A DNA stretch of 64,000 bases from Macrostomum lignano (taxonomy: Eukaryota): assembly GCA_002269645.1 (NCBI GenBank), contig NIVC01000177.1, forward strand, positions 124,001 through 188,000. Direction: 5' to 3'. A program made the position numbers and the translations under genes. Under the pieces are notes generated by a model, which did not search any database, was not told where the DNA came from, and saw only the letters and a list, made by a program, of their open reading frames with translations. Shown here one piece after another: positions 13,859-47,817 of this stretch. Position 1 is the stretch's first letter, and the number at the start of each line of letters is the position of its first letter.

Positions 13859-15509
13859 TTACGCAGCCTCCTGGTGCAGCTCGGGAAACAGTCTGAGTAG
13901 AAGAGGGTCGACCAGAGTAAACAGCAGCTGCTTGTTGACCCTAGGATACTGCAGCAGGTCGTGCAGACGGCTCAACGTCGCCTCGGCAGAGTCCGCGCCA
14001 AGCGCTTGCGACACGTCTGAGTAAGGGTAAAAAGCAAGTAGTAAAAGTTTTCATAAAATTGTTGTGATACATCAAAGTCACGATTTGAATTTTGACATCC
14101 CCTATTCTGTTAATTGAAATCCTCATTCTGCCAATTGAAATCCCACTATGCTCATCAATATCCTCATTCGGAGGATTACCAAATCAATCTTATGACCCTT
14201 AACGCTTCAAGTTTCAGAGCCACAATTTTCATGCGCGCAACAAATAAAGAACTGAGAGGACAACCACAATAAGGAGACTCACACACGCTGGAGCAGGCAG
14301 TTTTCAGGGCTGCCAAAGCGTCGGCTCGTCGTTTCTGTTTGTCGCCGTCGCCGGGAGCGACGCGACGCTCCGGGAAGAAGATTAAATCTAGGGTGGCGCG
14401 CATTGGCAGTTTGAAATTCGATAAGCTACTACTTTAAACTACTATAATACTAGTATGAGTAGTCAAGCAGCAATACGAGCTCGGGCTCACCCCTGAAGAG
14501 TTGCACAATGGGCACAGCCCTGTAGTCGCGAGTGAGTTCCAGCACCTTGGCGTTGATGAAATTGCGAATCAGTCGGTCAATCAGAGGACGCGCCAGCGGC
14601 CGGAGGCCCACAAGCAGGTGGCAGAGCCAGCGCCTCCACCAGGGGGTGTCTTCGCTGCCGCCGCCGACGCTTGCAAAGACGACTCGCTCCAGCAGGAACA
14701 GGGCCAAGTCGTAGATGCCGAACACGCGGGGCACGGACACCGGGCAGGGGGCGGTCAGGCTGGGCGACTGGTCGGGTGATAACGCCGCGTTGTTCCAGAA
14801 TAGGTAATTGTGCAGCTGCAGCCGGATGGCGGTTTAGAGAGCGATTTTTAGTGTGGGGTTGGAGGTGATTTTTATTGTGGTTGGAGGCGATTTTTATTGT
14901 GGGGTTGAAGGCAATTTTTTTGTGGTTGGAGGCGATTTTTATTGTGGGGTTGGAGGCGATTTTTATTGTGAGGGGGAAGTGGAGGCTATTTTTATTGGGG
15001 GGTTGGAGGCGATTTTTATTGTGATTTTGAAGGCAATTTTTTTGTGGTTGGAGGCGATTTTTATTGTGGGGTTGAAGGCAATTTTTTGTGGTTGGAGGCG
15101 ATTTTTATTGTGGGGTTGAAGGCAATTTTTTTGTGGTTGGAGGCGATTTTTATTGTGGGGGGTTGGAGGCGATTTTTATTGAGGGTCAGGGGTCGATTTT
15201 TTAGAGGATTGGAGGCGATTTTTATTAGGAGTTGGAAGCGATTTTTTGGAGGTTGGAGGCGATTTTTATTGTGGTGTTGGAGTTTACTTTATTCGAGGGA
15301 GGTTTGGAGGTAACTTTTACTGGGTGTTAGGGCGATTTTTAATAGGTTTGGAAGCGATTTTCATTAGGATTATTGAGAAAGTTTCGATTCGGGTTTTCAT
15401 GGCGGGTTTTGACATCGCATACGGGTAGTACGAGAATAACAATCTGAGGTCAAATTGCAAACAAACAAGTTAACTGAGCAACTAACCCGACTCTGCTTGA
15501 GCGATTCGA

Positions 15510-15541
<32 letters not shown>

Positions 15542-18500
15542 GTACCGCCGCGCGGCGCCAACGGCTCGGGCGTGGGCGCCTGAGTAGAAGCCAACAGACC
15601 GGGCAGGAAATCCTTAGCCAAAAAGAAGCCGCGCCGTTGAAACTTAGACGTGAGCCGGTTGAGACTGAGATCGGGCAGCAGGCTGGTCTCGAACTCCTGC
15701 AGCTGGTCGGACAGGAATAGGCGGAGCAGCTGAGACTGGCGCAGCAGCGGCTTGGCCAGCAGGGCGCGCAGGAAGCTCTCCAGCTCGGCCCGCTTCCCGG
15801 CTAGGAACTCCCTGCTTGAGCTGCCAATCAGCCGCTTCGACTGCAGCGGCAGGTCGCCGAGAGCGGCGCCGTGAAATTCACGAAGCTTCTCCTCCAGCAC
15901 GTAGAATTCCGAATACTTTCTGTACACCTTCCAGCTGTCGCCGCCGTTCTCTGCCGGGCAGCTAACGTGGATGACGTATTTCATCACTCCGCTGGACAGC
16001 TGGCCGTCGTCGGCCGAATTCTCGCCGAGGCCGGTGACCGTCACGCGCCAGTTGGCCATGTCGCTTTGTCGACGCTGCTGCTGTTGTTGCTGCCGTTGAC
16101 GAGAGCTGGCGGACAGAACCGAGGATGGCGGGCGGGTCAGCTGGTCGGCTAGAGAGGCGGCTTCCGGATACTCGGACGCGATGGTTGCCGGGTCGTTGCT
16201 AGGCAACATTGCCGCACCGCCAAGCGTAGAGTCCTCCAGTGCCTCCTCAGCTGGCAGCAAAGGAGGCAGCGACGAAGGGTGCTGGGCGGTGCGGACGGCC
16301 TGGCCGTCAACTATGGCCGACTGCTGCTGGCGGAAGAATCGAGACCGGCCTTGACGCTGCGGCGGCGCCAGGGAGCTGGCGAGTGTGAAAGAATAGACGA
16401 TGGCTTTCAGCGGCTTGAACAGACTGTTGGGCTGCTGATGAGGGATCGATCAGGAGGGTAGGTAGGGAGCCTACTGAGGGATCGATCAGGGGGGTAGGTA
16501 GGGAGGCTACTGAGGGACCGATCAGGGGGGTAGGTAGGCTACTGAGGGACTGATCAGGGGGTAGGGAGGCTACTGAGGGACTGATCAGGGGGGTAGGGAG
16601 GCTACTGAGGGACTGATCAGGGGGGTAGGGAGGCTACTGAGGGACCGATCAGGGGGGTAGGGAGGCTACTGAGGGACTGATCAGGGGGTAGGTAGGCTAC
16701 TGAGGGACTGATCAGGGGGTAGGGAGGCTACTGAGGGACCGATCAGGGGGGTAGGGAGGTAGGGAGGTAGGGAGGCTACTGAGGGACCGATCAGGAGGGT
16801 AGGGAGGTAGGGAGGCTACTGAGGGACCGATCAGGGGGTAGGGAGGCTACTGAGGGACCGATCAGGGGGGTAGGGAGGTAGGGAGGTAGGGAGGCTACTG
16901 AGGGACCGATCAGGAGGGTAGGGAGGTAGGGAGGTAGAGAGGCTACTGAGGGACCGATCAGGGGGGTAGGTAGGCTACTGAGGGACTGATCAGGGGGGTA
17001 GGGAGGCTACTGAGGGACTGATCAGGGGGGTAGGGAGGCTACTGAGGGACTGATCAGGGGGGTAGGGAGGCTACTGAGGGACTGATCAGGGGGTAGGGAG
17101 GCTACTGAGGGACTGATCAGGGGGGTAGGGAGGCTACTGAGGGACCGATCAGGGGGTAGGTAGGCTACTGAGGGACTGATCAGGGGGGTAGGGAGGCTAC
17201 TGAGGGACTGGTTAGGGAAGTGCAGCAATGCAGACTTCGGATGGCACACAAAAACATAAATTTAAACAGGATACGAGCTTACTAACAAAGAAACGAAAAA
17301 ACCAGTTCAACGTAGGTACAAATCATTTGAATCGAGGTAGAACCAATTAAAATTATTGGTCCAATGAGGGACCACCAGTCAGTTAAAGAAAAACACTATT
17401 TAAAAATTGTTGAGATAAGATATTAAAAATGCTGGACTAAAAGACCTCAACAAAGGGTGTAAAAGAACGACACCGCCTTACCAGCAGGACAAATACGGTA
17501 CATGCAAACTGAGTAACTTGATTCAAGGCTAAAGCTGCAGTCTCCTCTCACCCAGCTGAGCCTTCATCATCCGACAGGGCGCTCTTGGCCGCCGCCTCTG
17601 CGGTGGCGGCAGCGGCCGCTTTGGTCCGCTCCCACCACCAGGATAGGGTGGATGCGGCGGCGGCGGCGGTTGCCATGGGGTTGCTATGCCTTTTATTTTA
17701 TATCAATAGTTAATAGCATATTAATGAATAGGTTAATCAGTTATAAGGAGTGTTTTAAAAAGACCACCTGCTATTAAGAGTTAGAGGTTAGTCAGGGGGC
17801 TGTGTGCACCGCGGCGCACTTTAAGCGACATTGAGAGGCATTACTGCCCATTCCGCCGACTCCCCTGAGCAGGCACACAATCGCGCGGATACGTACGCAG
17901 TCATACGCACAGGCACACACTCACACAGGAGTGTACAGCGGCCCTAACTTTATTTTATCGTTAGGCATGCACACTTCACTGTGTCATGGGGGTTGGCCCT
18001 CAATGGCGTTAATTGCACGAGCAGAGCCAAGCCGAGATTCCAATTTAACTCCAAATTAATGTGACTGCACTTGGAATCGAGCCTGGGCCGCTGGCACATC
18101 AGAGCGCCGCGCTAGACCACTGGGCTACGGCCGGCCCCCCCTGCTATTAAGAGCAGCAAACACTCAAATAAGTTCAGAACTGGATCAATTTTCAATTGAG
18201 AGCTTAAAACTGAAAATTACCTGTCTCGCTAATTCGGCCTTCTGTTGAGTGCTGCGACAGTGACCCTTAACATTATATACTATATAGTAAAGCTTCACAA
18301 CATTTAGATAATAAAAAACAAGGGCTTCAGTACTACTAAAATATATATTATAAAATCTCTAAGCTTAGCGCAAGTGGATAAAATATGAAATTTCGAGCTT
18401 TTAATAATTGCATTTGCATCACATTAAGTCGGCGCCTTGCTTACTTGGCTTTAGCCGAACCTTGACCGCTGTCCCTGGAGCCCGACTCCTCCAGCACAAC

Positions 18501-21500
18501 CAGCTTCATGTAGCAGTCGCTATTGGCGAAGGCTGGCAGGTAGTGAGTCTCCAGAAAGTTGCACACCCGCTCGTGAGCTCTGCAATGGCGGGGAAAGAAA
18601 GATGTTGATATTTATATTATACGAGCGTAACTGTGTTGCAAGCCTCTTGCTTCACAATGCTCGGGAATTGACCAACTGTGCTCATAGCTGACCTTAGCAG
18701 TGACCAACTGTGCTCATAGCTGACCTTAACAGTGTTCAACTGTGCTCATAGCTTGCCTTAACAGTGACCAGCTGTGCTCATAGCTTGCCTTAACAGTGAC
18801 TAACTGTGCTCATAGCTGGCTTTAACAGTGACCAACTGTGCTCAAATTTGGCTTTAACAGTGACCAACTGTGCTCAAATTTGGCTTTAACAGTGTTCAAC
18901 TGTGCTCATAGCTTGCCTTAATAGTGACCAGCTGTGCTCATAGCTTGCCTTAACAGTAACTAACTGTGCTCATAGCTGGCTTTAACAGTGACCAACTGTG
19001 CTCAAATTTGGCTTTAACAGTGGCCAACTTTTTCCAACTCAAATTAAGAAAAAAATCACTTTTCAAACTCACATGAACCAAGCTGAGCTAGTCCGAAGGT
19101 TGGGCACGGAACTGGCGCCATCTTTGACAACTGGATAATAAAATACAGGGTAAATTTATTACACCCCTAATTTAAGGAGAGAGCAGGTAAAAAGATAAAA
19201 CCGGCTCACCATTTCGCAGGCAGTTCATAAACTCATCTGGAAGCTGCAGAGCCGCTATGATGTCCTTGTTGTGATGCAGAAGCGACTCGTAGATTCGCTC
19301 AATGTCCGAGTAGATTCTCTGACAGGTGTTGTCGCGAATCTCAGCCGCCACCAGGTCTTTGTTGATCATCTCTGCGGAGAATGGCGATTCAATTGGAGAA
19401 GTTACAAGCCAAATCATTGAGAAAAGATTCTCCAGACTGAGGTAATTCTCTAGCAATGTAAGAGGCGATTCCCCAGACTCATAAGGGATTCCCAGACTGA
19501 GATGGATTCCCCCGACTCAGAGGTGATTCTCCCAACTAAGAGGGGATTCCCCCGACTCAGAGGTGATTCTCCCAACTAAGAGGGGATTCCCCCGACTAAG
19601 AGGTGATTCTCCCAACTAAGAGGGGATTCCCCCGACTAAGAGGTGATTCTCCCAACTAATAGGGGATTCCCCCGACTAAGAGGGGATTCCCCAGACTCAT
19701 AAGGGATTCCCAGACTGAGATGGATTCCCCCGACTCAGAGGTGATTCTCCCAACTAAGAGGGGATTCCCCCGACTCAGAGGTGATTCTCCCAACTAAGAG
19801 GGGATTCCCCCGACTAAGAGGGGATTCCCGCAGACAGAGCTAATTCCCCAGCAGCGCAACAGGCGATTCCCAAGCAGTGTGAAAGCAATTCCTTTGCGGT
19901 ATAAGAATTCTCCAGTTTGAAAAGCGATTTACTAGTTTAACAGACAAAAAATGAAAAGGAGGTACAGAAGGCAAGCCAGCCGGCCCCTCACCCAGATCGC
20001 CGTAGAAAATCATCAGCTCCAGACTGTCGCACAATTTCATAAAATCGATGAAAGCCTGCCGAAGGCCGTGATGCTCGTACACGCTGCCAATATTGCTGGG
20101 AGGCTGCAGGCCCTGCTGCGGCTGCTGCTGCTGCTGTTGCCATTCGGCTTTGCTGGCAGCCATAGCCATCTCCGTGTACCGGTGCAGCACAGGCACCCTG
20201 GCGACTGGCTGGCCGCTCGGCTGCGGCAGCGGGAAATCGTCCAGCGCCTCCAGGATCAACCGGTTGACGGTGTGCGGATTTGCTAGCGAGTCCAGCGCCG
20301 GCATCAGCACGGCGACGGTCAGGATCTCCGTTAGTAGCATCTCTAGGCTCCTGGGGACGATTCATTGGGTTTGTTGTGATGAGCTGTTGTGGGGATGTTG
20401 TTTGTTGTGGGGATACGGGATTCTGTAGGATTATGGGAAAATAGGATATGGGATTTATAAGATTATTGGAAAATAGGATATGGGATTCTGTAGGATTATG
20501 AGAAGAGGGGATAAGGGATTCTGTAGGATTATGGGAAGCGGGGATATGGGATTCTGTAGGAATATGGGAAGCGGGGATATTGGATTCTGTAGGATAATGG
20601 GAAGCGGGGATATTGGATTCTGTAGGATAATGGGAAGCGGGTATATGGGATATTCTAGGATTATGGGAAAAGGGGTTATGGGATTCTGTTGGGAAACGGG
20701 AATATGGGATTCTGTAGGATTATGGGAAGAAGAGATACGGGATTCTGTAGGATTATAAGGAGCGGGGATATGACTCTAGGATTATAGGAAGAGATATGGG
20801 AAATGGGATCTCAAATCATAATTTTCAGCTGAAAGCGGGAAAACAGGGTTATTATTGAAATTGCTGACTGGGCTGGATATGTGAAACAATCAATGCTTAC
20901 TTGGAGCCCTTGGCCGTGGGGTGAAGCAGATGCGGCAGTACCTTGGACACAAGGCCTTTCACATAGTCATATTCTGCGGTCCGATCCTTCATGGCCACGT
21001 GCAGGTGGCCTCGCATGTTGCGCAGCATCAGCGACTCAAAGTTGGATGTGGAGCCCAGGTTGCCTGCGGATGGCGGGGTGCGGTGTCAGTCCTTGCCAGA
21101 TCCAAATTGTCAAATTTCAAATTCGGGAACGGTTCCGGAGAATTTCGGGAACGGTTCCAGTGATTTTCGGGAACGGTTCCAGTGATTTCGGGAACGGTTC
21201 CAGTGATTTCGGGAACGGTTCCAGTGATTTTCGGGAACGGTTCCAGTGATTTCGGGAACGGTTCCAGTGATTTCGGGAACGGTTCCAATCATTTTCGGGA
21301 AAGGTTCCAGTGATTTTCGGGAACGGTTCCAGTGATTTTCGGGAACGGTTACAGTGATTTTCGGGAAAGGTTCCAGTGATTTTCGGGAACTGTTCCAATG
21401 ATTTTTGGGAACTGTTCCACTCATTTTCGGGAACGGTTCCAGTGATTCTCGGGAACGGTTCCAGTGATTTTCGGGAACGGTTCCAATGATTTTCGGGAAA

Positions 21501-24500
21501 GGTTCCAGTGATTTTCGGGAACGGTTCCAATGATTTTCGGGAACGGTTTCAATGATTTCGGGAACGGTTCCAATGATTTTCGGGAACGGTTCCAGTGATT
21601 TTCGGGAACGGTTCCAGTGATTTTCGGGAACGGTTCCAATGATTTTCGGGAAAGGTTCCAGTGATTTTCGGGAAAGGTTCCAATGATTTTTGGGAACTGT
21701 TCCACTCATTTTCGGGAACGGTTTCAGTGATTTTGGGAACGGTTCCAATGATTTTCGGGAACGGTTTCAGTGATTTTCGGGAACGGTTCCAATGATTTTC
21801 GGGAAAGGTTCCAATCATTTTCGGGAACGGGTCCAATGATTTTCGGGAATTGTTCCAATCATTTTCGGGAAAGGTTCCAATGATTTTCGGGAACGGTTCC
21901 AATTATTTTCGGGAAAGGTTCCAGTGATTTTCGGGAACGGTTCCAAAGATTTTCGGGAACGGTTTCAATGATTTCGGGAACGGTTCCAATGATTTTCGGG
22001 AACTGTTCCAATGATTTTTGGGAACGGTTCCAATCATTTTGGGGAAAGATTCCAGTGATTTTCGGGAACGGTTCCAATGATTTCGGGAACGGTTCCAATG
22101 ATTTTCGGGAACTGTTCCAATGATTTTTGGGAACGGTTCCAATCATTTTGGGGAAAGATTCCAGTGATTTTCGGGAACGGTTCCAATGATTTTCGGGAAC
22201 GGTTTCAATGATTTTCGGGAACGGTTCCAATGATTTTTGGGAACGGTTCCAATGATTTTCGGGAAAGGTTCCAGTGATTTTCGGGAACGGTTCCAATGAT
22301 TTTCGGGAAAGGTTTCAGTGATTTTCGGGAACGGTTCCAATGATTTTCGGGAACGGTTCCAATGATTTTCGGGAACGGTTCCAGTGATTTTCGGGAACGG
22401 TTCCAGTGATTTTCGGGAACGGTTCCAGTGATTTCGGGAACGGTTCCAGTGATTTTCGGGAACGGTTCCAGTGATTTCGGGAACGGTTCCAATCATTTTC
22501 GGGAAAGGTTCCAGTGATTTTCGGGAACGGTTAGTGATTTTCGGGAAAGGTTCCAGTGATTTTCGGGAACTGTTCCAATGATTTTCGGGAACGGTTCCAG
22601 TGATTCTCGGGAACGGTTCCAGTGATTCTCGGGAACGGTTCCAGTGATTTTCGGGAACGGTTCCAATGATTTTCGGGAAAGGTTCCAGTGATTTTCGGGA
22701 ACGGTTCCAAACATTTTCGGGAACGGTTTCAATTATTTCGGGAACGGTTCCAATGATTTTCGGGAACGGTTCCAGTGATTTTCGGGAACGGTTCCAGTGA
22801 TTTTCGGGAACGGTTCCAATGATTTTTGGGAACGGTTCCAATCATTTTGGGGAAAGATTCCAGTGATTTTCGGGAACGGTTCCAATGATTTTCGGGAACG
22901 GTTTCAATGATTTTCGGGAAAGGTTCCAATCATTTTCGGGAACGGTTCCAATGATTTTCGGGAACGGTTCCAATGATTTTCGGGAACGGTTCCAATGATT
23001 TTCGGGAACGGTTCCAATGATTTTCGGGAACTGTTCCAATGATTTTCGGGAACTGTTCCAATGATTTTTGGGAACGGTTCCAATCATTTTGGGGAAAGAT
23101 TCCAGTGATTTTCGGGAACGGTTCTAATGATTTTCGGGAACGGTTCCAATGATTTTCGGGAACGGTTTCAATGATTTTCGGGAACTGTTCCAATGATTTT
23201 CGGGAAAGGTTCCAGTGATTTTCGGGAACGGTTCCAGTGATTTTCGGGATTATTAATAGACAACAAACCTCTGCGAAGCACATCGTTGCACACCTGGTAG
23301 TGCGCCACGGCTCCCGGTATCACCTGGTCTTCAACAAACTGGCCGATATCGCACTGAAAATCAAGTGAATTTCTGAAATTTAAGACTTGAAAATGAAACA
23401 TTATTATTGGTATAGCAATAAGTTTATTAAATCAACATACCCGAGAGCACCGATGCAGCAGTGCAGAGACGGCGTACTTCAGGTGCAAACGAACATCATT
23501 TACGAAATCTTCGCGAGAGCTAATCTCTCTGGAACATTTTAAACAAGATTTATATAATATTTTACTTGTCAGTACACAGATACTAAAATAACTAGATGGG
23601 CCACTCAGGCATATATGAGACACCACAAAAGGTGTTGGTCGATACTGACAGCAGGACGGTGGCCATGGAATACACTTAGTAAAACAGCTTTCTACTTTCA
23701 GTTCAGTAGCAAAGAAGAATACATAAGCTATTTTATAAAAATAAAGCCAGCTGAAACGACTTTGATAAGTTTAGAAGCCCAAGCTTGCAGGCGTAAATAG
23801 CTTGCTAATTGGCTCAGCAATAATGTACATTGGCCAGTCCACTGAAATGTACATGGCAGCTTTAGGCTGGAATTCCGAGAAAGGCAATAAAGATTGGGGC
23901 GGGGTGGGGGTAGTGTGGAAAGGCGCGGTTGGAGGGTTTAAGCTGGGGGTAAGAGCCAATAAATGAGCCTTGGCTTTAAAAATACATTAAAATGCTTCTG
24001 TTTAACTTACTACTGAACTGAAAGTAGCTTGCACGCAAATGTGCTGAGTGGCCCATCTGGTTATTCTAGTATCTGTGGTTAGTACTCAGTTTGAAGGCTC
24101 AATACAATAATATTTAACTCACTTATACCAACAGAGAATGTATCTGTCTATCACGAGCTCAAAAAACTGTAAATGAAAAGATGTAATAAACAAATAATAA
24201 AGCTTCATTTGCTAGACTTTATGATACTTAATTGGGTGTGCAAGCTGAGTAAAACAGAGGCTGAACTCACCTCGAACAAAGCGTCGCTGACTGGCTCGTC
24301 AACAGTAAAGTTGATGTTCAAATAGGGCGGAAACGAGCTGGTCGATGCACTTCTGAAGTCAATCGAATAGTTACAGTAATAAAATACAAACTGCATCATT
24401 GTAAAGTAGAGTTCCATGTCCGTAGCTAATTAATTTCCCGAAAATTTCCAAAAGTATTAATAAGCAATCCAATGGCAAGACTTCTTTTATTCTTTTACTA

Positions 24501-27728: not shown

Positions 27729-30700
27729 ATGTACCAAGAAATTGACGCCGCCAGTGCCGACGCACAGCATGTTGGCCGGTTGACGCGGCTGCGCGAATCC
27801 AAAGGCCTAGTCGTGGCCGTGGTCACCCTGCTGCTCATGCTAGACGTGATGCTCATCACTGTGCTTGAGCCGCTGCTGCCGGCAATGCTATTTGAACTCG
27901 ACCAGCTGCAACAAGGCGGCATCACTTGGTCGGCCTGGCTATCGAGTCTGTTCCGCTGCGGCGGAGGCGGCGTCAGCAGCATCGGCTACTTTTCTAACAG
28001 TTCCAATGACCAGCTCGACGGCAGCAGCGAGCGCCAGCTGTACGCAAAGTACGCCCCACAGATTGGTCTCGTGCTTGGTCTGAAGCCGGGCGTTGAGGTT
28101 ATCGGTAACCTGCTAGTCGGGCCGCTGGTAGATCGAGTCGGGCACAAGGCGCCACTTCTGATTGGCTCCGGGCTGTACCTAGTGCGTGTAATGCCCTTTG
28201 TTCTTATTTTATGCAGCATGCAACTGTAAATAAGAAGGATTTCAAGGTTACAAGATTACTATAGTCAGCATAGATTTTAAGGGCTAAAAGAAGCGAGGTT
28301 TCAGCAGTTCAACAACTAACCAGATAGCGTAGGGCAGGGGTCGGCAAACTCGGGCCCGCGAGCCATATGCGGCCCACCAAGCCTCTCTATCCGTCCTTCG
28401 GACTTTTGAAACTTCACAATAACAATACGGCCCCGCTCAAGGTTTATGTCTCTTCTCAGCTCTCCTCTCTAATCTCCTCTCTTTTCTCTCCTCTCCTCTC
28501 TTTTGCCTCTGTGACAATAGCCGTTTGCTTAACGCTTTTTAATATGTAATGACACATTCAAACAAAAGACAAGTTATAAGATTTTCCAAACAATTATTAT
28601 AAATCATAATCATTTTTACGGTCTCTTTCCATACCCAAGTATTGAATATTTCAGCATAGGGCATAAATTGTACTTTCATCAGAAGCCAACAACGTAAATT
28701 ACTCATCGTAAATAAGTGACCAACCCGTCTCACCATGCAGGTAACGGCTGGCATGTTCGGCTTCAGTCCCAACTATCCAATTCTTCTGATCGCCCGCCTG
28801 CTGCAGGCCGCCTCCTCTAGCTTGTCCACCGTGGCCGGCCTCGCCCTGCTGGCTGCCACCTTCGCCGGCGACGAAGTCGAACGAGCAAAAGCAGCCGCCG
28901 TAGCTTTTGGCGGCCTCAGCTTCGGCCTCATCATGGGCTTCCCGTTTGGCGCCGTCCTGGCGCAGTGGTTCGGCAGAGCCAGCCCGTTCCTGGTGCTCGG
29001 CGGCCTCTCCCTGCTGGACATGGTGCTCCGGCTGGCAGTCCGAATGCCTGCGGACTCCGCCTCTCATACCAGGAGGGACCGCGGCAACAAAGACAACAGG
29101 GATAAAGACAACGAAGAGGAGGAGAAAAAAGCCAAGCGGAGAGAGTCTACTTCGGCGTCTTTGAAAGAGATCGGGTAAACTCGACGCTGTTTCTGTCCGT
29201 AAAACACTGGAAGGATTGCTCACTTCTTTTTGATCGCCATTGCTCTAAAATTAAAAGACGTTTAATGTTGATTTAACTTTAAATTTAGAGCGATGTGATC
29301 AGTTGAAACAGAAGTGGCTCTACAGCTACTTGACTCAAACAGTGATCTCCTTTTTTCAAGTACTCGCCGATCACTTAGTGACAAGTGACAAAAATCGCTA
29401 GAGTCATTGGAAACAATTCACTAGTTGGCGACTCATATGATACGCTCATGACTCAACAGTCGCCAATCCGTCGCATTTACAGTTTTTTGAGCTGTAAAAA
29501 AGTCTAAAAAGTCACGTGAATTGTAGAATCGTAAAATAGTCAATAAAAAGTCGTCCAATAGTCGTCGTGTTAGCGCTTAACTTTCTATTAACTCAAGTAG
29601 AATATATAGAATAATACGAAATGCGGTTCTACGAGCGCAATTCATATAAAGTGGCGCAGAGGCGCTTTAGACGCAACTCGGTGATTGTACAGCGACTCGA
29701 GCAAGACTCAGATACGATTCTATGCTCGTACGGCCCCAGAGTCATTATAGAAGTCGTTTTATAGTCGCAGACAAAAAACGCCTCAAATTGACTTTTAGGC
29801 GATTTTTTGGCGACTTTTACCGTGATACTTCGTCGTTTTAGAGTTGTTCAGAGTCATTTGTTTCCTATTTTACCTGTGTTGCCTGCAATTACTCTGAAAC
29901 TCGATAAGAATCGCTAGAGTCATTCAGAAAACAACTGACCTATTGCAGAGCCACTCCGGTGGGAGCTCGCACCTTGTGGCGCCTCGCCACCAACAGGTAC
30001 GTCGGCACCATCCTGATGGCCGACTTCCTCATCCACTTCGGACTTGGCGCGGTGTTTACCACGGCGCCCAGCTTTATGCAGGACACTCTGGCCGGCTCGC
30101 TCTGGCAGATGGCCGTGGTGGCGCTGGCCTCCACCTGCCTGCAGTTCGGGGTGCAGTACGCCTGCTCCGGCTGGCTGGCAGCCAGGCCGCTCGCGAGATG
30201 GCGCGTCCTGTTTCCCAGCCTGGTTGTATTCGGCATCGGCATGCTGCTGTACCCGGTTGTTGGCGCCACCCGCAGCATCTGGTTTGCTGCTCTGCCCGAA
30301 TCAGTAAGAAACTTGAGGATTTGCAGTTCTTCTCAGAAGTTTCCAACTCTCCTCAGTAGTTACCAGCTCTCCTCAGTAGTTACCAGCTCTCCTCAGTAGC
30401 TACCAGCTCTCCTCAGTAGCTACCAGCTCTCCTCAGTAGTAACCACAGATACTATAAACAATATAGATACTGTTTATAGTATCTATGGTAGTAACCAGCT
30501 CCCCTCAGTAGTAACCAGCTCCCCTCAGTAGTAACCAGCTCTCCTCTGTAGTTACCAGCTCTTCTCAGTAGTTACTAGCTCTCCTCAGTAGTTACCAGCT
30601 CTCCTCAGTAGCTACCAGCTCTCCTCAGTAGCTACCAGCTCTCCTCAGTAGTAACCACAGATACTATAAACAATATAGATACTGTTTATAGTATCTATGG

Positions 30701-32107
30701 TAGTAACCAGCTCCCCTCAGTAGTAACCAGCTCCCCTCAGTAGTAACCAGCTCTCCTCTGTAGTTACCAGCTCTTCTCAGTAGTTACTAGCTCTCCTCAG
30801 TAGTTACCAGCTCTCATCTGTAGCTACCAGCTCTCCTCTGTAGTTACCAGCTCCCTCAGTAGTTACTAGCTCTCCTCAGTAGTTACCAGCTCTCATCTGT
30901 AGTTACCAGCTCTCCTCTGTAGTTACCAGCTCCCTCAGTAGTTACCAACTGCCCTCAGTAGCTTTTTTTCACAAAAACATTGTCAGGTACTCCGCATCGC
31001 CCTGGCTCTGTTCACCTGCACGTGTTTTCCCTCGTTAAACTACCTGGCTGACCGGCTGTTCACAGCCGAGTACGGAGCCGTGAACGGTCTGTACACCGGT
31101 GCTTTCAACCTGGGCATGTTCTGCGGCAGTCAGTACGCGGGTCTCCTGCTGGGCTGGCTGGGCTTCGAAGTCTTGTACAGCGCCTTCGCCATGGTGCTGC
31201 TGGCTTCAGCCGCGATTGGACTGGTGAGAAACTCAGACTGGTAGCACTGTGGACATTGGGATTGGGGTATTGGGATTGGGGTATTGGGATTGGGGTATTG
31301 GGATTGGGGTATTGGGATTGGGGTATTGGGATTGGGGTATTGGGATTGGGGTATTGGGATTGGGGTATTGGGATTGGGGTATTGGGATTGGGGTATTGGG
31401 ATTGGGCTATTGGGATTGGGCTATTGGGATTGGGGTATTGGATTGGGGTATTGGGATTGGGGTATTGGGATTGGGGTATTGGGATTGGGGTATTGGGATT
31501 GGGGTATTGGGATTGGGGTATTGGGATTGGGGTATTGGGATTGGGGTATTGGGATTGGGGTATTGGGATTGGGGTATTGGGATTGGGGTATTGGGATTGG
31601 GGTATTGGGATTGGGCTATTGGGATTGGGCTATTGGGATTGGGGTATTGGATTGGGGTATTGGATTGGAGTATTGGGATTGGGGTATTGGGATTGGGGTA
31701 TTGGGATTGGGTATTGGGATTGGGGTATTGGGATTGGGGTATTGGGATTGGGGTATTGGGATTGGGGTATTGGGATTGGGGTATTGGGATTGGGGTATTG
31801 GGATTGGGTATTGGGATTGGGGTATTGGGATTGGGGTATTGGGATTGGGGTATTGGGATTGGGGTATTGGGATTGGGGTATTGGGATTGGGGTATTGGGA
31901 TTGGGGTATTGGGATTTGGGCACTGGGACTCGGACATTGGGATTCGGGTATTGGGAATCGAAGAGGCATCAAATGCCTTGCTCCCATCGCCTGCAGGTGC
32001 ACCGCAGTCTCACTGATGACAGAGCGGCGATGTCAGCATCAGACCATGGCGGACGGGACCACCTCACCATTCTCGGCCACTCCTCAGCCAGCGGCACAGT
32101 TGTTTGA
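27729..32107 (+). CDS. SLC18 (vesicular amine/acetylcholine transporter-like) MFS protein, 529 aa; join(27729..28181,28741..29174,29949..30303,30987..31223,31997..32107)
   Basis: All junctions GT-AG and in phase. Gapless by-eye alignment to VMAT2: LMLDVMLITVLEP (TM1), QIGLVLGLKPGVEVIGNLLVGPL, IARLLQAASSSLSTVAGLALLA..F.GDEVERAKA, GLIMGFPFG, ASPFL, YLADR..EYGAV. Confidence 0.92.
28335..28510 (+). mobile_element. hAT/Charlie-like MITE copy (left end) in intron 1 of the SLC18 gene
   Basis: Begins CAGGGGTCGGCAAACT...GGCCCGCGAGCC..TGCGGCCC, a typical hAT/Charlie end. The interior matches 3391-3605. Confidence 0.6.
30349..30960. repeat. 20-bp minisatellite (CAGTAGTTACCAGCTCTCCT) filling SLC18 intron 3, with a 212-bp higher-order duplication
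   Basis: Directly visible. A palindromic insert occurs at 30442 and again at 30654. Confidence 0.95.
30442..30489. mobile_element. 48-bp hairpin insertion (ACCACAGATACTATAAACA-ATATAGATAC-TGTTTATAGTATCTATGGT); second copy at 30654-30701
   Basis: 19-bp inverted arms with one mismatch. AGTA is duplicated on both flanks. Confidence 0.7.
31255..31935. repeat. 14-bp G-rich minisatellite (GGGATTGGGGTATT)n filling SLC18 intron 4
   Basis: Lies between the donor at 31224 and the acceptor at 31994-31996. Confidence 0.97.
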
Positions 32108-46044: not shown

Positions 46045-47817
46045 ATGCCGCCACCCCGCAGCGGCATGATGCTGTTCTGCGAGTGCAGCTCCATCCGCGG
46101 CATGCCCAAAATTGCGCGCTCCTCGTCGAACTTCCTGCGCAAAATGTGGCTGGCCTTCGTCGTGATCATGACACTGGTGCTCATCATCTCCTCTTCTCTG
46201 TCCGTTCACTCCTACCTTCAATATGATGTCATCGTTCACACATCTGACATCCCCAATTTTGCTTCACCTTTCCCTGCCATCACCGTTTGTCTTCACCAGC
46301 CTTTCTCGTCGAGGGCCTTCAAGCTGTGGAGCAACAGGTCCGTGATGTCGCCGCGCGAGTACAATGCTCTGCTGCGTCGCTGGGCCCTGGAGGCCATCAA
46401 CAAGACTAGCGATTTCTTTCGGATCCAGAAAAAGGACGCCGATCCCATATCCTACTCCCTCTACTACGACATGCTGGAGGTGTACTACCAAAACATCCCG
46501 CTGCGTGACATCACTGTACTAAGCCACGATCCCAGCGTCATACGAAAGTGCATCGTAAAAACTGACGGCGTCAGCCACTTCAAGGACCCGTGCAACCTGA
46601 CGGAGCACGGCTTCAGCATAAAGCTTTTCTCGCATCCGAAGCACCTGAACTGCTACACGGTGGAGCCGAATACTCCAGCGGCCTCTTTCGACACTCAGTT
46701 CCTCGGCCTCGCAGTGGACCTCGGCCCCCCGCCTGACTATGCCAATTTCCAGCAGGGCTTTCTCAACGACGTCTTCGACCAGGCCACGGGCCTGCGAGTA
46801 GTCATCCACGAACCCAACCGCTACCCGAACGTGGAGCACTTTGGCAAAAACATCGAGGCTGGCAAGATGACTGAGCTGGCCTACACTCCCACGCTGTGGA
46901 ATCGCAGCAACACCCCTGTGAATCCGTGCATCACCAGCGGCGAGTCATTCACGGATCTTGGGCGCAGGTTCGATTACACTCAGCGAGAGTGCGCCAACAA
47001 GCACCTGCAGGAGTTGGCGATTCGCCGCTGCAACTGCATCGTCTGTTTGCCCGGGGTTCCTCGCACCCAGCCTCCGAGCAAGGAGCTGCCCTATTGCGCC
47101 TCTTTTACAAGCGAGTACAACAGTACTTTCGAGGACTTTGTCCGCCAGCTGCAGTGCTACGTTGAAATAACGCGGGACCTGCCGCAGTGGCCCTGCCTGC
47201 CACGCTGCCTCCTGACGGAGTACGAGACAAAATTGTCGGTGACCTACTGGGGCGCGACCGACTGGCAAGTTTACTGGTCAGGAAAGTTCGTCAATGACAT
47301 TGAGGAGCTCGGCGACCTCATTAAAGAGCGCGAGGGCAGGACGGGCCACGGCGAGGCTGCTCTGCGACCGCGCTTCGAGGCGCTGAAGGAGCGGCTCCTG
47401 CGATACCTGACCAAAGCCAACCTGACTGCGATCGCCAATGGCCAGGGGCCGGACGACATGGTCGAGTCCAAGAATTTTGCTTACGTTGTGCTGAAGCGCA
47501 AAAGCGAAAACCTCATTCTCAAAGAGGAGAAACAAGTGCTGACGCTAAACGCGCTCATGTCGCAGATCGGCGGCCTCTGCTCTCTCACCATCGGGCTCAC
47601 CTGTGCCTGCGCCGTCGAGGTCATCGAATTTTTCTACATCTACCTGACTGGCAAAGGCGGCGGAGCGGGGAATGCCGCTGCCCCCGCCATCCGACAGGAG
47701 AAGTCAGTTCCGCTCCGGTCGTCTCGGACGGAAGACGAAGACGCTTCTCCAGCAATTACGCATCCAGGGCAGTCTCTGAATTCGCAACATCACACTGCGA
47801 AACCGTCTGAACTGTAG
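46045..47817 (+). CDS. DEG/ENaC/ASIC-superfamily channel subunit (main exon, 590 aa from ATG 46045; about 659 aa with the upstream exons)
   Basis: Pre-TM1 FCECSSIRGMPKI, TM1 MWLAFVVIMTLVLII, FPAITVC, NCYT, GLRVVIHEP..YP, Cys-rich thumb (C...YTQREC..C.C, CLPRC), TM2 LMSQIGGLCSLTIGLT..VEVIEF. Confidence 0.96.
   Translation: MPPPRSGMMLFCECSSIRGMPKIARSSSNFLRKMWLAFVVIMTLVLIISSSLSVHSYLQYDVIVHTSDIPNFASPFPAITVCLHQPFSSRAFKLWSNRSVMSPREYNALLRRWALEAINKTSDFFRIQKKDADPISYSLYYDMLEVYYQNIPLRDITVLSHDPSVIRKCIVKTDGVSHFKDPCNLTEHGFSIKLFSHPKHLNCYTVEPNTPAASFDTQFLGLAVDLGPPPDYANFQQGFLNDVFDQATGLRVVIHEPNRYPNVEHFGKNIEAGKMTELAYTPTLWNRSNTPVNPCITSGESFTDLGRRFDYTQRECANKHLQELAIRRCNCIVCLPGVPRTQPPSKELPYCASFTSEYNSTFEDFVRQLQCYVEITRDLPQWPCLPRCLLTEYETKLSVTYWGATDWQVYWSGKFVNDIEELGDLIKEREGRTGHGEAALRPRFEALKERLLRYLTKANLTAIANGQGPDDMVESKNFAYVVLKRKSENLILKEEKQVLTLNALMSQIGGLCSLTIGLTCACAVEVIEFFYIYLTGKGGGAGNAAAPAIRQEKSVPLRSSRTEDEDASPAITHPGQSLNSQHHTAKPSEL

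What the first reader, a model, noticed from the sequence alone, without database searches (positions are those of the whole stretch)
27729..32107. VMAT-like transporter whose charged residues are relocated, not simply lost
By-eye gapless alignment to human VMAT2: D33, K138 and R189 are kept. E312->F (AVFTTAP), D399->T (ALFTCTC), D426->T (GLYTGAF), N34->V, Y422->N and Y433->M. New charges appear at V41->E, Q142->E, I301->D, N305->H, N388->E and G392->R. In VMAT2, E312 and D399 are central to amine binding and proton coupling. A pocket with a new Arg and shifted acids suggests a different cargo (zwitterion or anion) or different coupling, possibly a lineage-specific vesicular transmitter system.
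Basis: partly seen in the sequence, partly recalled or inferred. Interest (0 to 1): 0.72.

Follow-up and report, generated by a model that had tools for sequence, protein, structure and literature searches.

The report
Orphan VMAT-like transporter with relocated charges
This flatworm gene encodes a VMAT-like membrane transporter from an undescribed family found in worms and brachiopods, in which the buried charged residues that bind amines and protons have moved to neighbouring positions, so it probably carries a cargo other than the classical neurotransmitters.

Summary
Window 27729-32107 (+) is an intact five-exon gene for a 531-aa (or 529-aa) 12-helix MFS protein. It is 99% identical to a Macrostomum lignano hypothetical protein, and its closest solved relatives are VMAT1/2, then VAChT.

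The pattern is not private to this gene. Uncharacterised proteins from Owenia, Lineus and Tubulanus, plus unnamed environmental sequences, group with it; two partial-signature Lingula proteins do too. This group is separate from VMAT, VAChT and Portabella. It keeps D33, K138 and R189 and loses E312, D399 and D426. It gains Glu at Q142, Glu at N388 and a near-invariant Arg at G392; a subclade also gains Glu/Asp at V41.

These are partner positions. Q142E/D426N is a published fully active VMAT2 swap, N388 contacts E312, and V41 is the pseudo-symmetry mate of E312. D323, H327 and N449 are specific to Macrostomum.

The best reading is a working proton-coupled antiporter with a preserved N-domain core and a rebuilt C-domain amine site, so a non-classical cargo. 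Cargo, cell type and vesicular location are untested, and the VMAT C-terminal sorting motif is not conserved. Interest is moderate to high: a new variant of a known kind.

The parts
27729..28187 (+). Exon 1 (aa 1-153): N-terminus, TM1, short lumenal loop with one N-x-S sequon (N90), TM2 and the start of TM3. An alternative in-frame donor at 28182 removes 'RV' and gives 529 aa.
   Evidence: ORF, GT/AG sites. (NCBI model P0001 uses the shorter form). (AlphaFold helices 25-63, 99-137, 140-155).
27843..27872 (+). TM1 motif D39-x7-E47-P48 (LDVMLITVLEP). D39 corresponds to VMAT2 D33 and is kept. E47 sits at VMAT2 V41, the pseudo-symmetry mate of E312.
   Evidence: direct motif reading; hhalign of N half against C half pairs V41 with E312; acids at 41 and 312 never together.
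28083..28097 (+). TM2 K119-x3-E123. K119 corresponds to VMAT2 K138 and is kept. E123 sits at Q142 and takes over the charge of the lost TM11 Asp (D426).
   Evidence: (Q143E/D427N rat VMAT2 is fully active). (acids at 142 and 426 never together, p 3e-8, not corrected for phylogeny).
28741..29174 (+). Exon 2 (aa 154-298): rest of TM3, TM4 with R172 (VMAT2 R189; codon 28795-28797), TM5 with cytosolic-gate D197/R201, TM6, and a Lys/Glu-rich cytoplasmic loop.
29949..30303 (+). Exon 3 (aa 298-416): TM7, TM8, TM9 and the first turns of TM10. TM7 carries F334 in place of E312 (codon 30055-30057), plus D323 and H327, which are specific to Macrostomum. TM8 has Q363 in place of Y341. R381 corresponds to R357. 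TM10 starts here and ends the exon with P414-E415 (codon 30298-30300).
30987..31223 (+). Exon 4 (aa 417-495): rest of TM10, TM11 and TM12. TM10 carries R419 (codon 30993-30995, at VMAT2 G392), T426 (at D399, codon 31014-31016) and D438 (VMAT2 D411). TM11 carries N449 (Y422), Y452, T453 (D426, codon 31095-31097) and M460 (Y433). The P-E-x3-R motif spans the exon 3/4 junction, and its conserved spacing in relatives validates that splice.
   Evidence: (R419 invariant in A1).
31997..32107 (+). Exon 5 (aa 496-531 plus stop): end of TM12 and a 36-aa cytoplasmic tail. The tail contains DHLTIL, a dileucine-like motif that is not conserved in the clade, and ends in -TVV.
30324..30961 (+). Intron 3 tandem array: a 20-bp unit in about 31 copies with a 212-bp higher-order repeat. 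Non-coding; it explains part of the gene's length.
   Evidence: intron is 683 bp here and 564 bp in the second genomic copy.
31255..31956 (+). Intron 4 G-rich 14-bp minisatellite (ATTGGGATTGGGGT, about 50 copies). Non-coding and variable in length between copies.
   Evidence: intron is 773 bp here and 274 bp in L001.

Best explanation
The gene encodes a working member of an undescribed SLC18A-derived subfamily, here called the Glu/Arg clade. So far the clade is seen only in spiralians: Platyhelminthes, Annelida and Nemertea, with partial-signature relatives in Brachiopoda.

Shown here:
- It has the VMAT/VAChT fold.
- It keeps the N-domain polar network that VMAT2 uses for proton coupling: D33, K138, R189, Q192, S196, S197 and N146.
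- It keeps the cytosolic-gate salt-bridge residues corresponding to D214, R217, R357 and D411.
- The three other buried carboxylates of VMAT2 are absent.
- Carboxylates appear at their partner positions: TM2 Q142 to E for D426; TM10 N388 to E and TM1 V41 to E for E312.
- A near-invariant Arg appears at G392.

Inferred from helix periodicity: G392 lies on the cavity face of TM10, between the levels of N388 and D399.

Inferred mechanism: it is still a proton-driven antiporter that alternates access like VMAT. E47, E123, E415 and D39 serve as the protonatable groups, and R172-E415 and/or R419-E47 serve as inter-domain ion pairs. The amine-recognition half of the pocket is rebuilt and its charge partly reversed (D399, Y341, N305, N34 and E312 all changed). 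Its cargo is therefore probably not a classical monoamine or acetylcholine. A zwitterionic or only weakly cationic small molecule is more likely. The membrane it works in and the cells that express it are unknown.
For: Intact gene. Five exons with canonical splice sites. A second genomic copy differs at 7 synonymous and 4 non-synonymous codons, all four in loops, giving pN/pS of about 0.2.

Fold. The AlphaFold model has pLDDT 82.5 and pTM 0.83 with 12 TM helices. Foldseek's top hits are VMAT1, VMAT2 and VAChT with target-normalised TM-scores of 0.84-0.90.

Family. VMAT2 scores 1e-38 by phmmer. A profile of the clade scores VMAT1/2 at 1e-104 to 1e-105, VAChT at 1e-78, SLC18B1 at 2e-19 and NorA at 4e-17.

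Clade. The closest relatives are Owenia P0003 and P0004 at 37% identity, followed by Lineus and Tubulanus paralogues. In the neighbour-joining tree the 18-sequence clade has bootstrap 0.88. Eleven core members separate from 48 canonical sequences in 98% of replicates, and in 89% when the signature columns are removed.

Conservation of the new charges and of the retained machinery is tabulated. R419 is invariant in alignment A1.

Partner logic. The Q143E/D427N swap is active. E312 and N388 are in contact. V41 pairs with E312 by pseudo-symmetry (probability 98.7%). Exclusivity is complete in 97 sequences. An acid at 41 with loss of E312 also arose in a Capitella-type group (P0076, P0097) and in amphioxus (P0037), both outside the clade.

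Remodelled amine site. In VMAT2, D399A is inactive, E312D/Q are inactive and N34A/T are impaired.
Against: - No transport, binding, expression or localisation data exist for any member.
- Side-chain orientation could not be read from a model because no coordinates are returned. It rests on homology and helix periodicity.
- The tree is neighbour-joining on divergent sequences, so long-branch attraction could inflate clade support. Each half of the protein alone supports the split only moderately (0.38-0.66).
- E47 is present only in the nearest subclade, 4-5 of 15 members depending on the alignment.
- Pocket residues vary among paralogues, so a single shared cargo is unlikely.
- Four acids still line the inferred cavity, so a cationic cargo is not excluded.
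- The VMAT/Portabella C-terminal sorting motif is not conserved.
Confidence: 0.5

Rival explanations
1. Same job, different wiring. The protein is still a vesicular cationic-amine/H+ antiporter carrying a monoamine, trace amine, polyamine or choline ester. The relocated carboxylates (E47 and E415 for E312, E123 for D426) restore the function of the lost ones, and R419-E415 is only a structural intrahelical pair.
For: The engineered Q143E/D427N VMAT2 is fully active, and the bacterial homologue BbMAT tolerates an alternative Glu position in TM7. D33, K138 and R189 are kept. Four acids against three bases remain in the inferred cavity, so the net charge is still negative. The closest solved relatives are VMAT1/2.
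Against: D399 has no acidic replacement, and an Arg is inserted on the same helix face. D399A, E312Q/D and N34A/T cripple VMAT2. Y341, N305, F135, F334 and Y433 are also changed. The C half scores only 27 bits against 101-103 bits for the TM2-TM6 block. Two other spiralian phyla with clade members also have canonical genes: Lineus and Tubulanus (Nemertea) have canonical VMAT-type genes, and Lineus and Capitella (Annelida) have Portabella-type genes. The classical job is therefore already covered there.
Confidence: 0.22
2. The clade loads a new, non-amine transmitter (zwitterion or anion) into synaptic vesicles and so marks a lineage-specific transmitter system, much as proposed for Drosophila Portabella.
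For: It has SLC18A ancestry. There is a conserved cavity Arg and the amine-binding Asp is lost. Arg residues in MFS cavities are typical of anion carriers such as GlpT and NarK, as reviewed.
Against: There is no expression or localisation evidence. The conserved EExxx[IL][IL] tail motif of VMAT and Portabella is missing or non-conserved, and many clade tails are only 11-30 aa long. There are multiple paralogues per genome with variable pocket residues: at least five in Tubulanus, three in Lineus and an adjacently numbered pair in Owenia. That looks more like a diversifying metabolite or xenobiotic carrier family than a single transmitter loader.
Confidence: 0.12
3. A degenerating or non-transporting paralogue: a relaxed duplicate, a receptor-like 'transceptor' or a chaperone-like MFS that has lost proton coupling.
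For: It lacks three residues essential in VMAT2. The C half is strongly divergent. Macrostomum also changes the cytosolic-gate Tyr (Y422 to N449) and the lumenal-gate W318 to F340.
Against: The reading frame is intact in two genomic copies, with pN/pS of about 0.2 and no change at signature sites. The clade is retained across at least three phyla with a near-invariant Arg and conserved Glu. MFS motif A, the gate salt bridges and the N-domain network are kept. The fold prediction is confident.
Confidence: 0.08
4. Artefact: a mis-alignment or a wrong gene model creates the apparent loss and gain of charges.
For: The E-x3-R motif spans an exon junction. There are two possible exon 1 donors.
Against: HMMER, MAFFT L-INS-i and FFT alignments and direct motif reading all agree. 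The independent NCBI model is the same apart from two residues. The spacing of P-E-x3-R across the junction is conserved in relatives from other phyla. tblastn finds all five exons in order.
Confidence: 0.02

Closest known systems
VMAT1/VMAT2 (SLC18A1/A2), vesicular monoamine/H+ antiporters
   Same: Best sequence and fold match. It has a 12-TM MFS fold and a lumenal loop with an N-glycosylation sequon between TM1 and TM2. It keeps D33, K138, R189, Q192, S196, S197, N146, P42 and motif A. It also keeps the cytosolic-gate residues R217, R357 and D411; at 214 the alignments place D197 or E198, both acidic.
   Different: E312, D399 and D426 are absent. N34, N305, Y341, F135, F334 and Y433 are changed. 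There are new charges at 41, 142, 388 and 392. The TM1-TM2 loop is much shorter, and the Cys in the TM7-8 loop is missing. The C-terminal KEEKMAIL-type motif is not conserved. The protein falls outside the VMAT clade.
VAChT (SLC18A3)
   Same: Same fold and same N-domain charges.
   Different: VAChT keeps E312, D399 and D426 and has its own marks: C at 392, I/L at 388 and D at 200. The clade profile scores it lower than VMAT, 1e-78 against 1e-105.
Portabella (Drosophila prt, 'SLC18A4'), orphan putative vesicular transporter
   Same: An orphan SLC18A paralogue with unknown cargo that has also lost the TM11 Asp (D426 to Q).
   Different: The Portabella clade was recognised here through 'portabella [Carabus]' P0261 and its arthropod, tardigrade, nemertean and annelid relatives. 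It keeps E312, D399, V41, Q142 and G392 and has H at 388. It keeps the EExxxIL tail motif. It forms a separate branch.
Engineered rat VMAT2 Q143E/D427N, and BbMAT E222/E229 (Yaffe et al., reviewed in PMC5940252)
   Same: These show that a buried carboxylate in this family can be moved to a contacting position with activity retained. The window protein carries the same TM11-to-TM2 move naturally.
   Different: Those are single laboratory swaps in proteins that remain amine transporters. Here three relocations and a new Arg are combined and fixed in a natural clade.
SLC18B1 / VPAT (vesicular polyamine transporter)
   Same: It shares the MFS fold, the TM4 Arg and a different arrangement of acidic residues from VMAT.
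   Different: It is a far more distant relative: 9e-7 for the single sequence and 2e-19 for the profile. VPAT keeps the TM7 acid (D255, equivalent to E312) and lacks D33. This protein does the opposite.

Membership tests
Major facilitator superfamily / SLC18A-type fold | 12-TM MFS fold with a Pfam MFS_1 match and motif A (G-x-x-x-D-R-x-G-x-K/R) between TM2 and TM3 | tested here: met
   MFS_1 scores 5e-35. AlphaFold gives 12 TM helices with pTM 0.83. Foldseek finds VMAT1/2 and VAChT at TM-scores of 0.84-0.90. GPLVDRVGHK is present.
SLC18A (VMAT/VAChT/Portabella) | Closer in sequence to VMAT/VAChT than to any other MFS family | tested here: met
   VMAT2 1e-38, against SLC18B1 9e-7 and SLC22 2e-4. 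The clade profile gives VMAT 1e-105, VAChT 1e-78 and NorA 4e-17.
SLC18A (VMAT/VAChT/Portabella) | N-domain buried charges: TM1 Asp (D33), TM2 Lys (K138), TM4 Arg (R189) | tested here: met
   D39, K119 and R172 are present.
SLC18A (VMAT/VAChT/Portabella) | TM7 Glu-Pro (E312-P313), conserved in all human SLC18 members and in bacterial relatives | tested here: not met
   The residues are F334-T335. The clade has L/I/S/F/M at this position. All 22 reference sequences have E.
SLC18A (VMAT/VAChT/Portabella) | TM10 Asp (D399) | tested here: not met
   The residue is T426. The clade has L/T/I/M. All 22 references have D.
VMAT / VAChT | TM11 Asp (D426) paired with the TM2 Lys | tested here: not met
   The residue is T453. 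The charge appears instead at E123 (Q142), one turn from K119.
VMAT / VAChT / Portabella | Cytosolic-gate salt-bridge residues (D214, R217, R357, D411) | tested here: met
   R201, R381 and D438 are present. At 214 the HMMER alignment gives D197 and the MAFFT alignment gives E198, both acidic.
VMAT / Portabella | Conserved acidic dileucine-like sorting motif about 15 residues after TM12 (EExxx[IL][IL]) | tested here: not met
   The motif sits at a fixed position in the VMAT and Portabella references. In the clade the tails are short and variable. Macrostomum has a non-homologous DHLTIL further downstream.
VMAT orthologue group | Branches within bilaterian VMATs | tested here: not met
   In the neighbour-joining tree the core members separate from all canonical sequences in 98% of bootstraps.
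Portabella orthologue group | Portabella signature (T305, E312, H388, G392, D399, Q426) and branch | tested here: not met
   P0261 'portabella' and its relatives carry this signature and form their own branch. The window protein shares none of the diagnostic residues.
SLC18B1 / VPAT | Close sequence relationship, and the acid arrangement of VPAT (no D33 equivalent, TM7 Asp kept) | tested here: not met
   Only weak similarity, confined to the N half. The charge pattern is the opposite.
Spiralian Glu/Arg clade (defined here) | TM2 K-x3-E, TM10 P-E-x3-R, no acid at 312, 399 or 426, D33 and R189 kept; in a subclade, TM1 D-x7-[ED]-P | tested here: met
   All features are present in the window protein. 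They are shared with Owenia, Lineus and Tubulanus proteins and with unnamed environmental sequences.
Vesicular neurotransmitter transporter (functional class) | Proton-gradient-driven uptake of a transmitter into synaptic vesicles, and neuronal expression | not testable with these tools
   No expression, localisation or transport data could be obtained. No paper mentions the locus.

The most novel reading that the evidence does not exclude
The Glu/Arg clade is a fifth functional branch of the vesicular SLC18 family. It would load a non-amine (zwitterionic or anionic) signalling molecule into secretory vesicles of spiralian neurons or gland cells, and so define a transmitter or neuromodulator system absent from flies, nematodes and vertebrates. 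At the same time it is a natural 'mirror-image' rewiring of the MFS proton-coupling site: the Glu moves from TM7 to its symmetry mate on TM1, and an Arg is added on TM10 opposite the conserved TM4 Arg.
Probability: 0.12. Interest if true: 0.85.

Novelty: new variant of a known kind. Interest (0 to 1): 0.6.

Why it matters
SLC18 transporters are drug targets, and their proton-coupling mechanism is still disputed. The recent VMAT2, VAChT and VPAT structure papers disagree on which carboxylates carry the protons.

This clade is a natural experiment. Every one of the three contested carboxylates (E312, D399, D426) is gone, while the D33/K138/R189 core and the gates remain. Carboxylates reappear exactly at a known contact (N388), at a known functional swap site (Q142) and at the pseudo-symmetry mate (V41).

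If the proteins transport, they show which features of the coupling site are truly required. They also give ready-made designs for reciprocal mutagenesis of VMAT2.

Biologically, the clade adds an orphan SLC18A branch, alongside Portabella, to the unsolved question of how many vesicular transmitter systems exist. It does so in Macrostomum lignano, a species where, from general knowledge, RNAi and transgenesis are available.

Tried and rejected
1. The word-index homologue search with the window protein and with the clade alignment returned almost nothing useful: only the M. lignano copy and bacterial or fungal MFS proteins. The exhaustive representative search was needed to find the clade.

2. 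I looked for a tandem paralogue in the window. tblastn finds only the five exons of one gene.

3. Portabella membership is rejected, on the signature and branch of a sequence named 'portabella' and its relatives. The original Portabella paper (PMC3201771) is not held, so the comparison rests on sequences and not on that paper.

4. SLC18B1 membership is rejected, on weak similarity and an opposite charge pattern.

5. I tested the idea that G392 is the pseudo-symmetry mate of R189. The profile alignment instead pairs R189 with N388 and G193 with G392, so I dropped that idea.

6. The C-terminal dileucine motif as evidence for vesicular sorting: it is present in Macrostomum but not conserved in the clade, so it is not used as support.

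A literature search for the locus name found nothing, and searches for a described spiralian SLC18 clade found none.

8. Measuring cavity exposure from the AlphaFold model was not possible, because coordinates are not exposed.

9. dN/dS among orthologues was not attempted, because at 26-37% identity synonymous sites are saturated. Only the two M. lignano copies were compared.

Full report
WHAT IS THERE

The interval 27729-32107 on the + strand holds one complete eukaryotic gene of five exons: 27729-28187, 28741-29174, 29949-30303, 30987-31223 and 31997-32107. All four introns are GT..AG, and the gene starts with an ATG and ends with a TGA. The product is 531 aa. An in-frame alternative donor at 28182 removes two residues (RV). 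That gives the 529-aa form used by the NCBI model and fits the relatives without an indel.

tblastn finds the five exons once each, in order, and no second copy in the window. Introns 3 and 4 are filled with tandem arrays: a 20-bp unit in about 31 copies, and a 14-bp G-rich unit in about 50 copies.

The protein is 99% identical to 'hypothetical protein BOX15_Mlig034172g3' of the free-living flatworm Macrostomum lignano. That copy lies on contig NIVC01002059.1 of GCA_002269645.1, with the same upstream sorting-nexin neighbour. The two coding sequences differ at 11 codons, 7 synonymous and 4 non-synonymous. All four amino-acid changes are in loops and none is at a signature site, and pN/pS is about 0.2. 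The two copies differ in intron length through repeat copy number.

CHECKING THE OBSERVATION

Pfam gives MFS_1 at 5e-35. Against all PDB sequences the best matches are VMAT2 (1e-38), VMAT1 (6e-36) and VAChT (2e-32). SLC18B1 scores only 9e-7.

- D33 is kept as D39, and N34 becomes V40.
- V41 becomes E47.
- K138 is kept as K119, and Q142 becomes E123.
- R189 is kept as R172.
- I301 becomes D323, and N305 becomes H327.
- E312 becomes F334.
- N388 becomes E415, and G392 becomes R419.
- D399 becomes T426, Y422 becomes N449, D426 becomes T453 and Y433 becomes M460.

MAFFT alignments with many relatives give the same columns. The motifs can also be read directly from the sequences.

The N half is well conserved: the TM2-TM6 block scores 101-103 bits. 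The C half is much less so, at 27 bits.

An AlphaFold2 model built on 120 SLC18A sequences is confident, with pLDDT 82.5, pTM 0.83 and 12 TM helices. It superposes on VMAT1, VMAT2 and VAChT structures with target-normalised TM-scores of 0.84-0.90.

IT IS A CLADE, NOT A ONE-OFF

An exhaustive HMMER search of 1.84 billion cluster representatives found only a few closer relatives:
- Two proteins with consecutive accession numbers on one contig in the annelid Owenia fusiformis, at 37% identity (E 7e-64 and 7e-51).
- Several paralogues in the nemerteans Lineus longissimus and Tubulanus polymorphus.
- Two Lingula (brachiopod) proteins.
- About ten unnamed metagenome or transcriptome sequences.

Where these have names, they carry automatic labels such as 'synaptic vesicular amine transporter-like'. 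Ordinary VMATs come next, at about 1e-38.

These relatives share the signature. Counting 15 members including the window protein:
- D33 is kept in 10, K138 in 7 (plus 2 with Arg) and R189 in 12.
- Q142 is Glu in 10.
- E312 is always a non-acid, mostly L, I, S or F.
- N388 is Glu in 12, plus one Asp and one His.
- G392 is Arg in 14, and is invariant in the 12-sequence alignment A1.
- D399 is L, T, I or M.
- D426 is T, N, A or M.
- Y341 is Gln in 9.

V41 is Glu or Asp only in the nearest subclade: Macrostomum, both Owenia proteins, one Lineus protein and one unnamed sequence.

The retained machinery is notable. The clade keeps Q192, S196, S197 and N146 of VMAT2 'polar network 1', P42, W318 (10 of 15), motif A, and acidic or basic residues at the cytosolic-gate positions D214, R217, R357 and D411.

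A neighbour-joining tree of 97 sequences puts 18 sequences, including the window protein, in one clade with bootstrap 0.88. This clade lies outside a group that holds VMAT, VAChT and a third branch. Eleven core members separate from all 48 canonical sequences in 98% of replicates, and in 89% when 21 signature columns are removed. Either half of the protein alone gives only 0.38-0.66.

A profile of the clade scores VMAT1/2 at 1e-104 to 1e-105, VAChT at 1e-78, SLC18B1 at 2e-19 and NorA at 4e-17. The clade is therefore SLC18A-type and nearest to VMAT. Its basal position in the tree may be a long-branch effect, because the bacterial outgroup itself has the TM7 Glu-Pro.

NOT PORTABELLA, NOT VPAT

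The third canonical branch contains a protein named 'portabella [Carabus blaptoides]' and its arthropod, tardigrade, nemertean and annelid relatives. Its signature keeps V41, Q142, E312, G392 and D399, and has T at 305, H at 388 and Q at 426. The window protein shares none of these diagnostic residues.

VPAT is far more distant. According to its structure paper, it keeps the TM7 acid and lacks the D33 equivalent, which is the opposite arrangement. That paper also states that the TM4 Arg is the only buried charge conserved in all human SLC18 proteins, and that the TM7 acid is the only VPAT substrate-binding acid shared with the rest of the family. Among the SLC18 lineages compared here, the clade described in this report is the only one without that TM7 acid.

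THE CHARGES ARE RELOCATED TO PARTNER POSITIONS

Three lines of evidence support relocation.

First, in rat VMAT2 the K139-Q143-D427 network links TM2 and TM11, and the double mutant Q143E/D427N is fully active (PMC5940252). The clade carries exactly this move: E at 142 and no acid at 426.

Second, in the tetrabenazine-bound VMAT2 structure, E312 and N388 form 'polar network 2', with the N388 side chain pointing at the E312 carboxylate (PMC10959523). The clade has a non-acid at 312 and Glu at 388.

Third, a profile-profile alignment of the N half against the C half of the family is significant (probability 98.7%, E 4e-15). It pairs V41-P42 with E312-P313, N34 with N305, R189 with N388, and S200 with D399. 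The E-P-x-x-P motif has therefore moved from TM7 (VMAT2 LEPALP, here VFTTAP) to the symmetry-related TM1 (VMAT2 VVPIIP, here LEPLLP).

Across the 97-sequence alignment, the paired positions never both carry the charge:
- No sequence has acids at both 41 and 312 (Fisher p 9e-5).
- None has acids at both 142 and 426 (p 3e-8).
- None has acids at both 388 and 312 (p 7e-8).
- None has Arg at 392 together with an acid at 399 (p 6e-8).

These p-values are not corrected for phylogeny. However, the acid at 41 with loss of E312 also arose outside the clade, in a Capitella-type pair (P0076, P0097) and in an amphioxus protein (P0037). Glu at 142 without D426 also occurs in two unrelated sequences. These cases point to repeated compensation.

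By helix periodicity, positions 388, 392 and 399 lie within about 40 degrees of each other on TM10. The new Arg should therefore project into the cavity between the levels of the old E312/N388 pair and D399. This is an inference, because the tools do not give coordinates.

MOST LIKELY FUNCTION

The following is shown: an intact, constrained gene; the SLC18A fold; a retained N-domain coupling network and gates; and conserved new charges.

The following is inferred. The protein is still a proton-driven alternating-access antiporter in which E47, E123, E415 and D39 are the titratable groups. R172-E415 and/or R419-E47 replace the R189-E312 inter-domain pair of VMAT2.

The amine-recognition side is rebuilt. 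In VMAT2, D399 faces the amine of dopamine and D399A is inactive, E312D and E312Q are inactive, and N34A and N34T are impaired. Here these positions are T, F and V, and Y341, N305, F135, F334 and Y433 are also changed. The inferred cavity goes from four acids and two bases to four acids and three bases.

I therefore favour a cargo other than the classical monoamines or acetylcholine, plausibly a zwitterion or a weakly cationic small molecule. My confidence in this overall picture is about 0.5, and much lower for any particular cargo.

The main rival, at about 0.22, is that relocation is neutral compensation and the protein still carries a cationic amine. Degeneration (0.08) is unlikely given retention across phyla and the pN/pS value. 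Artefact (0.02) is essentially excluded.

Nothing here shows neuronal expression or vesicular location.

VMAT and Portabella references share an acidic dileucine-like motif at a fixed place about 15 residues after TM12 (KEEKMAIL, EENKSIL). The clade's tails are short and variable, and Macrostomum's DHLTIL is neither positionally equivalent nor conserved.

The clade has several paralogues per genome with variable pocket residues: at least five in Tubulanus, three in Lineus and two in Owenia. That pattern fits a diversifying family of metabolite or xenobiotic carriers at least as well as a single transmitter loader.

NOVELTY AND VERDICT

The sequence is in public databases, but only as a hypothetical or automatically named protein. 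Literature searches found no description of this clade or locus.

It is a new variant of a known kind: an orphan SLC18A subfamily with a rewired charge network. It would interest transporter specialists as a natural test of which buried carboxylates proton coupling needs, and neurobiologists as a possible further orphan vesicular carrier.

Interest is 0.6. The strongest reading not excluded, a new spiralian transmitter system, has a probability of about 0.12.

Noticed in passing
window 31255-31956 (intron 4) and 30324-30961 (intron 3); L001 13367-13640 and 12566-13129: Two intronic minisatellites. One is a G-rich 14-bp unit, ATTGGGATTGGGGT, in about 50 copies. The other is a 20-bp unit in about 31 copies with a 212-bp higher-order repeat. 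Their lengths differ between the two M. lignano copies of the gene: intron 4 is 773 against 274 bp, and intron 3 is 683 against 564 bp. The exons are about 99.3% identical.
   Followed up: partly
window 28182 / 28188: Exon 1 has two in-frame GT donors 6 bases apart. The upstream one gives the 529-aa NCBI form, which fits the homologues without an indel. The downstream one adds Arg-Val in TM3. Either this is alternative splicing, or only one donor is used.
   Followed up: partly
window 46045-47817 (+), 51288-52682 (+), 58749-60296 (+), 15397-16260 (-): Long ORFs near the gene match excitable-cell and membrane-protein families. There is a 590-aa DEG/ENaC (ASC) channel in a single ORF, a rhodopsin-family GPCR, and a sodium:dicarboxylate symporter (EAAT-like) fragment. 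A PX-domain exon belongs to a PXA-PX-Nexin_C sorting nexin, which is also the upstream neighbour in the second genomic copy.
   Followed up: partly
P0010, P0018, P0127 (Xenopus laevis 'chromaffin granule amine transporter' and relatives): Another divergent SLC18A lineage, this one in a vertebrate. It has E312 to Q (A in P0127) and D399 to G (S in P0127), while D33, K138, R189 and D426 are kept. It is not part of the spiralian clade.
   Followed up: no
P0076, P0097 (Capitella teleta type) and P0037 (Branchiostoma lanceolatum): Independent SLC18A-like proteins that also carry Glu or Asp before the TM1 Pro (LEPILP, VDPILP, VDPIMP) and have lost the TM7 Glu. They keep Gly at 392. The Capitella-type pair keeps D426, and P0037 has Glu there. 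This suggests repeated TM7-to-TM1 relocation.
   Followed up: partly
P0261, P0069, P0188, P0274 and relatives: The Portabella branch is not confined to arthropods. Proteins with its signature (E312 and D399 kept, H at 388, Q at 426, tail EENKSIL) occur in a tardigrade, in the nemertean Lineus and in the annelid Capitella.
   Followed up: partly
window codon 31083-31085 (N449) and F340: There are Macrostomum-specific changes at gate residues. The cytosolic-gate Tyr (VMAT2 Y422; Y or F in the other clade members) is Asn in both genomic copies. The lumenal-gate Trp (W318) is Phe.
   Followed up: no
window 21110-22841 (-): Two ORFs of 212 and 232 aa give weak, domain-less hits to DUF3300. They are probably low-complexity or repeat-derived sequence rather than genes.
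   Followed up: no
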